Origin: Octopus bimaculoides
Lineage: Eukaryota
Length of the DNA: 64,000 nucleotides
NCBI RefSeq assembly: GCF_001194135.2
Contig: NC_069003.1
Coordinates: 2,311,635-2,375,634 of the forward strand
Direction of reading: 5' to 3'
Within the stretch, counting starts at the first letter, position 1; each line of letters opens with the position of its first letter. The position numbers and the translations under genes are program-made. Shown piece by piece: positions 2,117 through 3,177 of the stretch. The notes under the pieces were generated by a model. It was not told where the DNA came from and did not search any database. It saw only the letters and a program-made list of their open reading frames with translations.

Positions 2117-2158
<42 letters not shown>

Positions 2159-2188
2159 ACATGTATGCATATACATATATATATATAT

Positions 2189-2225
2189 GAGGACAGTGGT
2201 TTTGTTAGCAAGGACATTTGTGTCC

Positions 2226-2256
<31 letters not shown>

Positions 2257-2614
2257 CACTGGTTACGGTGGCAGGCAAGACTGCTGTAGCAGCAGAGTTT
2301 TTCTTTTTCTCCATTCTCTCCTTAACTGTGAGGAAGGAAGACAAGGAAATTATTCTGATTATATGTCTGTGCACACGTTTGAATGTGGTGTGTGCCAGAG
2401 GGTTTGCAAATCCAATGGGGGTCTTAAAAGACATGTTAGGATCCACAATGAGCAGAACTTACTTGCAGGTATTGGTAGTGCAATTCAGAGGTGCAATCTG
2501 TGTGGGTGTTTTTTCAAAACACTGTCTGGTTTAAAAAGCCACATCAGACGCCATGAAAGGGCTAAGGTGTAGGTGCAGGAGGTGGTCAAACTCTGTTTAA
2601 GGAGTAGACAACCA

Positions 2615-2649
<35 letters not shown>
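2189..2649 (+). mobile_element. Short retroposed insertion (non-autonomous or 5'-truncated LINE, RTE-like) with (AT)n tail and long TSD
   Basis: Flanked by CACATGTATGCATAT(A/G)CATATATA at 2158 onward and 2650 onward (one mismatch). The body has a 5' hairpin, a (GTT)n run and the ZnF ORF. Confidence 0.6.
2363..2572 (+). CDS. 69-codon ORF with two intact C2H2 zinc fingers, probably the C-terminal end of an RTE-type LINE ORF2
   Basis: ATG at 2363 to TAG at 2570-2572 gives MSVHTFECGVCQRVCKSNGGLKRHVRIH-(linker)-RCNLCGCFFKTLSGLKSHIRRHERAKV. Both fingers fit C-x2-C-x12-H-x3-H, with Leu at the usual +10 position. There is no TGEKP linker. A short 3' UTR ends in ACAACCACC(AT)n. Confidence 0.7.
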   Translation: MSVHTFECGVCQRVCKSNGGLKRHVRIHNEQNLLAGIGSAIQRCNLCGCFFKTLSGLKSHIRRHERAKV

Positions 2650-2654
<5 letters not shown>

Positions 2655-3177
2655 GTATGCATATGCATATATATATATATATATATATATCGATGTCTAT
2701 ATATATATAGAGAGAATGAAAGTAAGAGAGAAAAAAAAGAGTATTTTTGGTTATCTCACCCCCCATTAAAAAATTGATTTATCTCCTCCCGTTTTAAGAA
2801 AAATATCGGGACATTTGGTCGTCTGCTGCACCTTGTAAATATTGCTAAACCCTCAATAAAACAATTAAAAAAATGAAAAATCAAGCATAAAAACTTAAAT
2901 AATTAATCATCTTACTGAATCTGATAAGATTTTTATAACAAATCCTACCATTCCAATTGAGGAGGCCCAAAGTCAACTATGTCTTGAAGTATTGAATCGA
3001 AAGGATCTAACTTAAGTTTTTAGTGGAGAGATAACCCAGTTTTCTAATGGTACTTTTTTTCATTAGGGATGGGATAACCAAAAAGTACCAGACAGAATGA
3101 TATATATAAATGTCTATCTACATATCTATACATGCATATATCTATGCATATATACACATGTCTATACATATATACAA

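What the first reader, a model, noticed from the sequence alone, without database searches (positions are those of the whole stretch)
2158..2680. Compact retroposed cassette carrying an intact double C2H2 zinc finger, inserted into a (TA)n tract
Seen: a ~430-bp body with an (AT)n tail, flanked by a one-mismatch duplication CACATGTATGCATAT(A/G)CATATATA; an ATG-initiated 69-codon ORF with two textbook C2H2 fingers and no stops, while every other TE ORF in the window is broken; and a non-coding-looking 5' 170 bp with a hairpin and (GTT)n. Known: some RTE-type LINE ORF2 proteins end in C2H2-like fingers, and coleoids have a large C2H2-ZNF expansion. Inference: this may be a bipartite non-autonomous element (LINE 5' end fused to the ZnF-coding 3' end) that spreads ready-made zinc-finger modules into microsatellites, a possible raw-material route for ZNF evolution.
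Basis: partly seen in the sequence, partly recalled or inferred. Interest (0 to 1): 0.7.

Follow-up and report, generated by a model that had tools for sequence, protein, structure and literature searches.

The report
Truncated zinc-finger LINE copy in microsatellite
This is a young, dead-on-arrival fragment of a jumping gene (a LINE retrotransposon whose protein normally ends in three zinc fingers) that landed in a TA-rich microsatellite; the "intact zinc-finger gene" is simply the last 69 codons of that protein, so the finding is largely ordinary, apart from 159 bases of unknown origin at its front.

Summary
The sequence features are real. A 428-bp body (2189-2616) splits an impure (TA)n array. 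It is flanked by a direct repeat that is longer than reported: 30/31 identical, and 62/64 if the "(AT)n tail" is counted. The 69-codon ORF has two good C2H2 fingers.

It is not a gene of its own. It aligns at 43-50% identity with fingers 2 and 3, plus the natural stop, of LINE ORF2 proteins built APE-RT-3xC2H2. The 44-nt 3' UTR carries that group's conserved terminal motif. Relatives all end in (TATG)n. Those with a visible 5' boundary also have (TATG)n upstream, so landing in such microsatellites is normal for the group.

Homology stops near 2348. The 159 bp upstream scores at background against the basic region and finger 1, while the same segment in 10 relatives scores 87-124. So this copy is two-part.

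I could not determine where the front part comes from, because no genome of the source species was searchable. It could be the LINE's own leader (RIME-like internal deletion), a captured RNA, or a divergent master. No second copy was found in the window or in any searchable database. ORF intactness is explained by youth. Two-part LINE derivatives and zinc-finger LINEs in octopus are already described. Interest is low.

The parts
2070..2188 (.). Left half of the impure (TA)n microsatellite that was split by the insertion
   Evidence: TRF period 2, 59.5 copies, 75% matches; sequence read
2125..2188 (+). Left copy of the target-site duplication. The certain core is 2158-2188 (31 nt); the possible full extent is 2125-2188 (64 nt).
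   Evidence: Ungapped match to 2617-2680 is 62/64; the core is 30/31. The motif is unique to these two sites at fewer than 3 mismatches.
2189..2347 (+). 5' module of unknown origin (159 bp, GC 0.44). It contains the hairpin 2211-2228 and a perfect (TTG)10 at 2226-2256. It is not collinear with the LINE ORF2 region that relatives have here.
   Evidence: Frameshift-tolerant alignment to relatives' basic region plus finger 1 scores 30 forward and 35 reverse, against a genomic background of 31.5 +/- 5.3. Ten relatives score 87-124. A profile search found nothing significant. No tRNA and no Rfam family. Fold z = -4.85. GC.
2348..2572 (+). C-terminal coding remnant of LINE ORF2. It comprises the linker (NYSDYMSVHTFE), finger 2 of 3 (2384-2446), finger 3 of 3 (2492-2554) and the natural stop (2570-2572).
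   Evidence: 43-50% identity to the tails of P0060, P0082, P0125, P0129 and P0147. Alignment A1 shows the same stop position a few residues after the last His. Pfam zf-C2H2 x2.
2573..2616 (+). 44-nt LINE 3' UTR. It has a small stem-loop (CTCT 2591-2594 / GGAG 2601-2604) and the terminal motif GAGTAGACAACCACC(A).
   Evidence: Alignment A2 with L001, L003, L005 and L016 has 22 invariant columns, including GGTC..CTC..GAGT.GAC..CCA.CAT. The motif occurs once in the window.
2617..2680 (+). Right copy of the target-site duplication. 2617-2649 is the (AT)16 run that may instead be a tail; 2650-2680 is the certain core.
   Evidence: 62/64 to 2125-2188. Relatives carry (TATG)n, not (TA)n, tails.
2681..2709 (.). 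Rest of the right half of the (TA)n microsatellite
   Evidence: TRF array 2617-2709

Best explanation
A single, fairly recent LINE retroposition (target-primed reverse transcription) put a 428-nt composite RNA into an impure (TA)n microsatellite and duplicated 31-64 bp of target.

The 3' 269 nt (2348-2616) are the genuine 3' end of a LINE whose single ORF runs APE endonuclease, reverse transcriptase, then three C-terminal C2H2 fingers. This copy keeps the linker, fingers 2 and 3, the natural stop and the 44-nt 3' UTR with the terminal motif that the element's own machinery presumably recognises. The two-finger "ORF" is therefore an inherited, passive remnant. It is intact only because the copy is young.

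The 5' 159 nt (2189-2347) are not the ORF2 segment that should precede finger 2, so the template was already two-part. My split for the front part is:
- about 45%: the leader of the same LINE, joined to the 3' end by internal deletion (a RIME/NARTc/Bov-A-type mini-LINE);
- about 30%: an unrelated RNA or filler captured by template switching at the 5' junction;
- the remainder is covered by the rival explanations.

Shown: the homology of the 3' part, the breakpoint, the flanking duplication and the microsatellite context. Inferred: a single event, and the origin of the front part.
For: - An exhaustive phmmer search found two-finger matches that are LINE tails at 43-50% identity. P0125 has RVT_1 plus three terminal fingers.
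- L001 and L004 show APE, RT and zinc finger in one element of about 4 kb.
- The three-finger architecture is the norm: 34 of 55 relatives show three regularly spaced intact fingers.
- The stop codon sits where relatives stop.
- The 3' UTR motif is shared with L001, L003, L005 and L016, and the stem is kept through a change on both sides (CTCG/CGAG to CTCT/GGAG).
- Every relative whose 3' end was read, except L001 and the unrelated L015, ends in a run of TATG units. L006, L008 and L012 also have (TATG)n on the 5' side. Microsatellite residence is therefore a group habit.
- Flank identity is 30/31 to 62/64 and is unique in the window.
- The breakpoint: the front part scores 30/35 against a background of 31.5 +/- 5.3, while 10 relatives score 87-124.
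- GC of both parts is 0.44 against 0.30 in the flanks.
- With 2-4 random substitutions the ORF stays stop-free in 86-93% of simulations.
- Literature: octopus RTE-2_OV has EN, RT and C2H2 (PMC9115989). Two-part non-autonomous LINEs are known in RTE, Ingi, Vingi and R2 (PMC5786205).
Against: - No parent element and no second copy could be found, so the leader origin of the front part and the existence of a family are both untested.
- Relatives are only 35-50% identical, so an octopus master with a diverged or lost finger 1 cannot be excluded.
- BLAST extensions weakly align CSSRVFLFLH with the finger-1 core CLSKAGLxSH at the right spacing.
- The tail is (TA)n-like rather than (TATG)n.
- A target duplication of 31-64 bp is long for most LINEs.
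- The clade (RTE, L2/CR1-like or Vingi) was not established by phylogeny.
Confidence: 0.62

Rival explanations
1. Ordinary 5'-truncated LINE copy. The whole 428 bp is collinear with an octopus-lineage master element whose ORF2 has lost finger 1 and the basic region. In the master these would be replaced by low-complexity sequence, including a poly-Val (GTT)n run.
For: The zinc-finger reading frame stays open back to 2165. BLAST extends some alignments through DCCSSRVFLFLHSLLN against finger 1, with correct spacing to finger 2. GC is uniform across the body. Truncation is by far the commonest fate of LINE copies (general knowledge).
Against: All 10 relatives tested keep the region, scoring 87-124, while the window scores at background. 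The profile finds nothing in the zinc-finger frame. Two other frames are equally open. The closest 3'-UTR subgroup (L001, L003, L005, L016) has an intact finger 1.
Confidence: 0.15
2. This is an amplified two-part non-autonomous family whose conserved two-finger ORF is translated or selected. It seeds ready-made zinc-finger modules into microsatellites as raw material for host ZNF genes.
For: The two-part structure is supported. The ORF is intact with all eight zinc ligands. An in-frame Met is present. Two-part LINE derivatives are known. Coleoid ZNF expansion is documented (PMC9115989 background).
Against: There is one copy in 64 kb. Nothing above 50% identity was found among 1.8 billion representative proteins or 5.8 billion clusters. 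The Met is an inherited linker residue. Intactness is expected from youth. The fingers have a 15-residue linker with no TGEKP-type linker, unlike tandem host ZNFs. There are no expression or selection data.
Confidence: 0.06
3. One-off chimera. Reverse transcriptase copying the LINE 3' end switched to an unrelated cellular or repeat RNA, or filler DNA was captured at the 5' junction. The front part could be, for example, the (GTT)n-tailed 3' end of another stringent LINE or SINE plus spacer. Such an element would never have amplified.
For: The hairpin immediately followed by a perfect (TTG)10 looks like a stringent-type retroposon 3' end. There is a single flanking duplication around both parts. 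No other copy was found anywhere searched.
Against: About 90 bp between the (TTG)n and the LINE homology remain unexplained. No other (GTT)n array in the window shares the upstream hairpin. Such chimeras are rare compared with members of amplified families (general knowledge).
Confidence: 0.3
4. Processed pseudogene or fragment of a host C2H2-ZNF gene, not a transposon part.
For: Generic C2H2 similarity to thousands of multi-finger proteins.
Against: The best two-finger matches with the same spacing, linker, stop position and 3' UTR motif are LINE tails. There is no poly(A), and no TGEKP-type linker between the fingers.
Confidence: 0.01

Closest known systems
RTE-2_OV, the LINE expressed in the Octopus vulgaris brain (Petrosino et al. 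2022, PMC9115989)
   Same: A single ORF of about 1100 aa with endonuclease, reverse transcriptase and a C2H2 zinc finger, in octopus. The relatives found here (L001, and P0277 and P0295 at about 1050-1100 aa) have the same domain order.
   Different: The RTE clade assignment of the present group was not tested.
Two-part non-autonomous LINEs: RIME (from ingi), NARTc (from L1Tc), Vingi-1_EE derivatives, Bov-A (from Bov-B) (Kojima 2018, PMC5786205)
   Same: A short element made of a non-coding 5' part joined to the extreme 3' end of a LINE. It is mobilised in trans and flanked by a target-site duplication.
   Different: Those are defined by many copies, and by both parts matching the autonomous partner. 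Here there is a single copy, the partner is unknown, and the origin of the front part is unproven. This one still carries 75 codons of ORF2.
C2-L1Tc, the C-terminal C2H2 domain of Trypanosoma cruzi L1Tc (PMC2805920)
   Same: C2H2 fingers at the very C-terminus of a LINE ORF. They are shown there to act as a nucleic-acid chaperone, which is the likeliest role of the fingers in the parent element here.
   Different: It has two fingers, comes from a different clade and has RNase H upstream. No sequence comparison was made here.
Microsatellite-targeting LINEs such as Dong ((TAA)n), Waldo ((ACAY)n), Mino, Kibi and Koshi (Kojima & Fujiwara 2004, cited in PMC5786205; details from my own knowledge)
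   Same: The element sits inside a microsatellite that resembles its own 3' tail. (TATG)n is the complement of (CATA)n, which is the same array as (ACAT)n and therefore an ACAY-type repeat.
   Different: Those belong to the R1, R4 and Tx1 groups with other domain sets. Target specificity of the present group is inferred from 3 full-length relatives plus this copy, and has not been demonstrated.
U6/L1-type chimeric retrocopies made by template switching (Buzdin et al. 2002; from my own knowledge)
   Same: A 5' foreign RNA part fused to a 5'-truncated LINE 3' part inside one target-site duplication.
   Different: The 5' part here matches no known small RNA.

Membership tests
LINE group APE-RT-3xC2H2 with (TATG)n tail (relatives L001-L016) | C-terminal fingers 2 and 3 with the group's spacing and signature (CK[ST]xGGLKRH ... 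[ST]LxGLKSHxRxH) | tested here: met
   43-50% identity and same spacing (36 residues between the fingers)
LINE group APE-RT-3xC2H2 with (TATG)n tail (relatives L001-L016) | ORF ends a few residues after the last His, followed by a very short 3' UTR with a stem-loop and the terminal motif GAGTxGACAxCCAyCAT | tested here: met
   Stop is 5 residues after the last His. The UTR is 44 nt. A2 has 22 invariant columns.
LINE group APE-RT-3xC2H2 with (TATG)n tail (relatives L001-L016) | (TATG)n 3' tail | tested here: inconclusive
   The window has (AT)16 followed by CACATGTATGCATATGCA(TA)n. This is TATG-like only in part, and may be duplicated target.
LINE group APE-RT-3xC2H2 with (TATG)n tail (relatives L001-L016) | Basic region (FExxR...KRxxRK) and finger 1 directly upstream of finger 2 | tested here: not met
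   Score 30/35 against background 31.5 +/- 5.3; relatives score 87-124
LINE group APE-RT-3xC2H2 with (TATG)n tail (relatives L001-L016) | APE and RT domains (autonomous element) | tested here: not met
   No APE or RT similarity anywhere near the locus, nor in the front part. The copy is a non-autonomous fragment.
Two-part (RIME-like) non-autonomous LINE family | The 3' part is the extreme 3' end of an autonomous LINE, and the internal region is missing | tested here: met
Two-part (RIME-like) non-autonomous LINE family | The 5' part matches the 5' end or leader of the same LINE | not testable with these tools
   The parent element was not available. Leaders of distant relatives show no similarity, which is uninformative at this divergence.
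Two-part (RIME-like) non-autonomous LINE family | Many copies sharing the same internal junction | not testable with these tools
   Only 64 kb of the genome was available, and it holds one copy. Nothing was found in the collections searched.
SINE (Pol III head plus LINE tail) | A head derived from tRNA, 5S, 7SL or snRNA | tested here: not met
   ARAGORN found none. Rfam at E <= 10 gave only TA-repeat artefacts.
RTE clade | RT-domain phylogeny placing the element within RTE | not tested
   No reference clade sequences were available. Element size (about 3.4-4.7 kb) and the single ORF of about 1050 aa are compatible. The C-terminal FExxR...KRxxRK region resembles L2/CR1-type tails from my memory only.
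LINE 5' HDV-like self-cleaving ribozyme | Nested double-pseudoknot ribozyme at the first nucleotides of the element | tested here: not met
   No Rfam hit in the window's front part or in 9 relatives. A hand-drawn P1 (GAGGACA/UGUCCUU) is unsupported.
Host tandem C2H2-ZNF gene or processed pseudogene | TGEKP-type linkers, poly(A), and similarity to a host gene | tested here: not met
   The linker is 15 residues with no TGEKP-type motif. There is no poly(A). The best architecture-matched hits are LINE tails.

The most novel reading that the evidence does not exclude
The 428-bp unit is one member of an amplified cephalopod mini-LINE. In this reading it is the LINE leader fused in frame to the last two zinc fingers, it still expresses a small two-finger nucleic-acid-binding protein, and by homing to TA/TATG microsatellites it scatters exon-ready C2H2 modules that host genes occasionally capture.
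Probability: 0.06. Interest if true: 0.6.

Novelty: new member of a known kind. Interest (0 to 1): 0.2.

Why it matters
As it stands, this matters mainly for annotation. The "intact double zinc-finger ORF" should be masked as a LINE 3' fragment and not called as a gene.

Two points have some wider interest. First, the LINE group it belongs to (APE-RT-three C2H2 fingers, very short 3' UTR, (TATG)n tail, microsatellite on both sides) looks like a microsatellite-resident lineage that is widespread in marine samples. Its terminal fingers are natural candidates for tail or target recognition. Second, if the 159-bp front part proves to be the LINE leader and the junction is shared by many copies, this would add a cephalopod example to the short list of two-part non-autonomous LINEs that are thought to seed SINE bodies.

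Tried and rejected
- **Second copy in the window.** blastn with word size 7 and tblastn found only (GTT)n noise. Other (GTT)n arrays do not share the upstream hairpin.
- **Exact-protein look-ups** of the 135-, 69- and 115-aa ORFs in public assemblies returned nothing.
- **Word-indexed protein search** with the window peptide gave no hit.
- **DNA scans** of metagenome contigs (front-part hairpin) and prokaryotic genome contigs (3' UTR and front-part strings) returned nothing.
- **RTE-2_OV sequence** in the octopus paper's supplements was not in the portion held. The Kojima 2018 supplements are not held, and the Vingi paper is not held.
- **Twin-priming inversion.** The minus strand reads RREWRKRKTLLLQ and GHKCPC, which recall KRAVRKRENVLLQ and MHKCPDC of relatives. 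The profile score beat 394 of 400 mononucleotide shuffles. With a genomic-background null and frameshift-tolerant alignment it is ordinary, with 30 of 110 random windows scoring as high. Rejected as unsupported.
- **Degenerate in-frame finger 1** is not supported by the profile or the alignment tests.
- **HDV-like ribozyme at the 5' end** is not supported by Rfam.
- **tRNA head:** none.
- **Clade naming** through source names of RT homologues was uninformative.
- **Literature on (TATG)n-tailed LINEs:** nothing found.

Full report
**What is there.**
The window is AT-rich (about 30-40% GC), packed with microsatellites and interrupted by N gaps, as in a draft cephalopod assembly. At the finding, a 428-bp body (2189-2616, GC 0.44) interrupts an impure (TA)n array (2070-2188 and 2617-2709).

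These are the only two sites in the window that match it with fewer than 3 mismatches. The duplication is longer than reported. In the register fixed by that motif, 2158-2188 against 2650-2680 is 30/31, and the match continues without gaps to 2125-2188 against 2617-2680 at 62/64. That register ends exactly at the two ends of the body. The target-site duplication is therefore 31-64 bp. The 33-nt "(AT)n tail" cannot be told apart from duplicated target.

**The zinc-finger ORF.**
Bases 2363-2572 encode 69 residues with two Pfam zf-C2H2 matches (E = 5.6e-10). The frame is open from 2165, but two other frames are also open across the region.

An exhaustive phmmer search of 1.84 billion representative proteins gave mostly generic multi-finger proteins. 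The five hits with exactly two matched stretches (P0060, P0082, P0125, P0129, P0147; 43-50% identity) all carry the match at their C-terminus.
- P0125 has an RVT_1 reverse-transcriptase domain followed by three terminal C2H2 fingers.
- Contigs L001/L002 and L004 show the full element: Exo_endo_phos endonuclease, RVT_1, then the finger tail, in about 4 kb.
- RT homologues are single ORFs of about 1000-1100 aa on contigs of 3.4-4.7 kb.
- Three regularly spaced fingers are the rule: 34 of the 55 relatives screened show three intact, regularly spaced fingers.

The window's two fingers align with fingers 2 and 3, and the stop codon falls where the relatives stop. Homology extends upstream of the ATG to NYSDY (from 2348). 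The Met aligns with a Met in the same linker of L001 and P0147. The ORF is therefore the inherited C-terminus of LINE ORF2, not a gene with its own start.

**The 3' end.**
The 44 nt after the stop align with the ends of L001, L003, L005 and L016. They share GGTC, a 4-bp stem-loop and GAGT-GAC-CCA-CAT, giving 22 invariant columns. The stem is kept through a change on both sides, CTCG/CGAG to CTCT/GGAG.

Nearly every relative whose end was read runs into TATG repeats directly after this motif or its variant GGAGCAATCAACATG. These are L004-L014 and L016, with L003 cut by the contig end after CATCATCATGTA. L001 is the exception: it ends CCATCATG and then continues into non-repeat sequence. The three full-length relatives with a visible 5' boundary (L006, L008, L012) also have (TATG)n upstream. 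Living inside TATG/TA-type microsatellites is therefore normal for this LINE group.

**The junction.**
All relatives have a conserved basic stretch (FExxR...KRxxRK) and finger 1 just upstream of finger 2. I tested three ways whether 2189-2347 encodes this.
- A profile of that region from 34 relatives found nothing in the zinc-finger frame, and only 4-5 bits on the minus strand.
- That minus-strand score beat most mononucleotide shuffles. It comes from a polypurine run translating to Lys/Arg.
- With frameshift-tolerant protein-to-DNA alignment, the window scores 30 (forward) and 35 (reverse), against 31.5 +/- 5.3 for random 159-mers of the same window. The equivalent 159 nt of ten relatives score 87-124, including one with frameshifts.

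The test therefore has power, and the window fails it. tblastn with APE and RT sequences also finds nothing in the front part. Because the 3' part and the flanking repeats are nearly undamaged, the front part cannot be a decayed finger 1. It was different in the template.

**What the front part is.**
This is unknown. It has the hairpin AAGGACA-TTTG-TGTCCTT, a perfect (TTG)10, a predicted fold well below shuffles (z = -4.85) and the same GC as the LINE part. It has no tRNA and no Rfam family, including HDV-like ribozymes. It has no similarity to relatives' leaders, which is uninformative at this distance.

Three origins remain:
- the leader of the parent LINE, joined by internal deletion. This is the known RIME/NARTc/Vingi/Bov-A pattern, reported for the RTE, Ingi, Vingi and R2 clades (PMC5786205);
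- a foreign RNA or filler captured at the 5' junction by template switching;
- an octopus master that has replaced this region.

I put these at about 45%, 30% and 15%. The decisive data (copies elsewhere in the genome, the master element) were out of reach. No copy exists in the window. The window's ORFs are not on record in public assemblies. Protein searches give nothing above 50% identity. DNA scans of metagenome and prokaryotic contigs were empty.

**Function.**
In the parent element the terminal fingers most likely bind nucleic acid during retrotransposition. The C-terminal C2H2 domain of L1Tc is a nucleic-acid chaperone (PMC2805920). Recognition of the (TATG)n tail or target is a reasonable guess for this group.

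For the fragment itself nothing suggests function. The flanking repeats differ by about 3%. With 2-4 random substitutions a 69-codon ORF stays stop-free in 86-93% of simulations. "Intact while other TE ORFs are broken" therefore reflects age. The other remnant of this LINE kind in the window (about 32417-32795) is old and full of stops.

**Comparison and novelty.**
A LINE with endonuclease, RT and C2H2 finger is already described in octopus (RTE-2_OV, PMC9115989). Two-part non-autonomous LINEs are a described kind. This locus is a new member of a known kind. The clade of the group (RTE, L2/CR1-like or Vingi) was not tested.

The strong reading, a family that spreads ready-made finger modules for host ZNF evolution, is not excluded. 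It has no positive evidence (probability about 0.06).

**Verdict.**
Interest is low (0.2).

Noticed in passing
window 32417-32795 (+): A decayed tail of a LINE of the same kind. It has GKRxP...KLR, a WxNxI stretch, a QRK..DARK basic stretch and a finger-1 remnant (CST*NRVYLSKVGFVSHSRL), with several stops. It shows no DNA similarity to 2189-2616.
   Followed up: partly
loci L004-L014, L016 (3' ends); L006 ~640-765, L008 1-17, L012 1-68 (5' sides): The APE-RT-3xC2H2 LINE group has very short 3' UTRs and (TATG)n tails. Full-length copies have (TATG)n on both sides. This suggests either a microsatellite-specific lineage or head-to-tail arrays. It is common in marine metagenome assemblies.
   Followed up: partly
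protein P0271: A protein 73% identical to the L001 reverse transcriptase, with C2H2 fingers, is deposited as 'MAG: reverse transcriptase family protein, partial [Nitrosomonadaceae bacterium]'. This is probably a eukaryotic LINE contig binned into a bacterial MAG.
   Followed up: no
window 2189-2228: GAGGACA (2189-2195) and AAGGACA (2211-2217) can both pair with TGTCCTT (2221-2227). The first pairing would start at the element's first base with a G-U pair, as in P1 of HDV-like ribozymes found at some LINE 5' ends. Rfam gives no support.
   Followed up: partly
window 19227-19405: A 24-nt periodic array TATATATACACATATATACACATG (7.3 copies). Its unit resembles the duplicated target motif at 2158/2650 (3 mismatches). 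Impure TA/CA/TG arrays of this type are frequent in the window.
   Followed up: no
window ~5300-5580, 12420-12430, 42240-42320, 59300, 62060: Runs of N (assembly gaps) next to microsatellites. Repeat lengths in this assembly, including the TA arrays around the finding, may not be exact.
   Followed up: no
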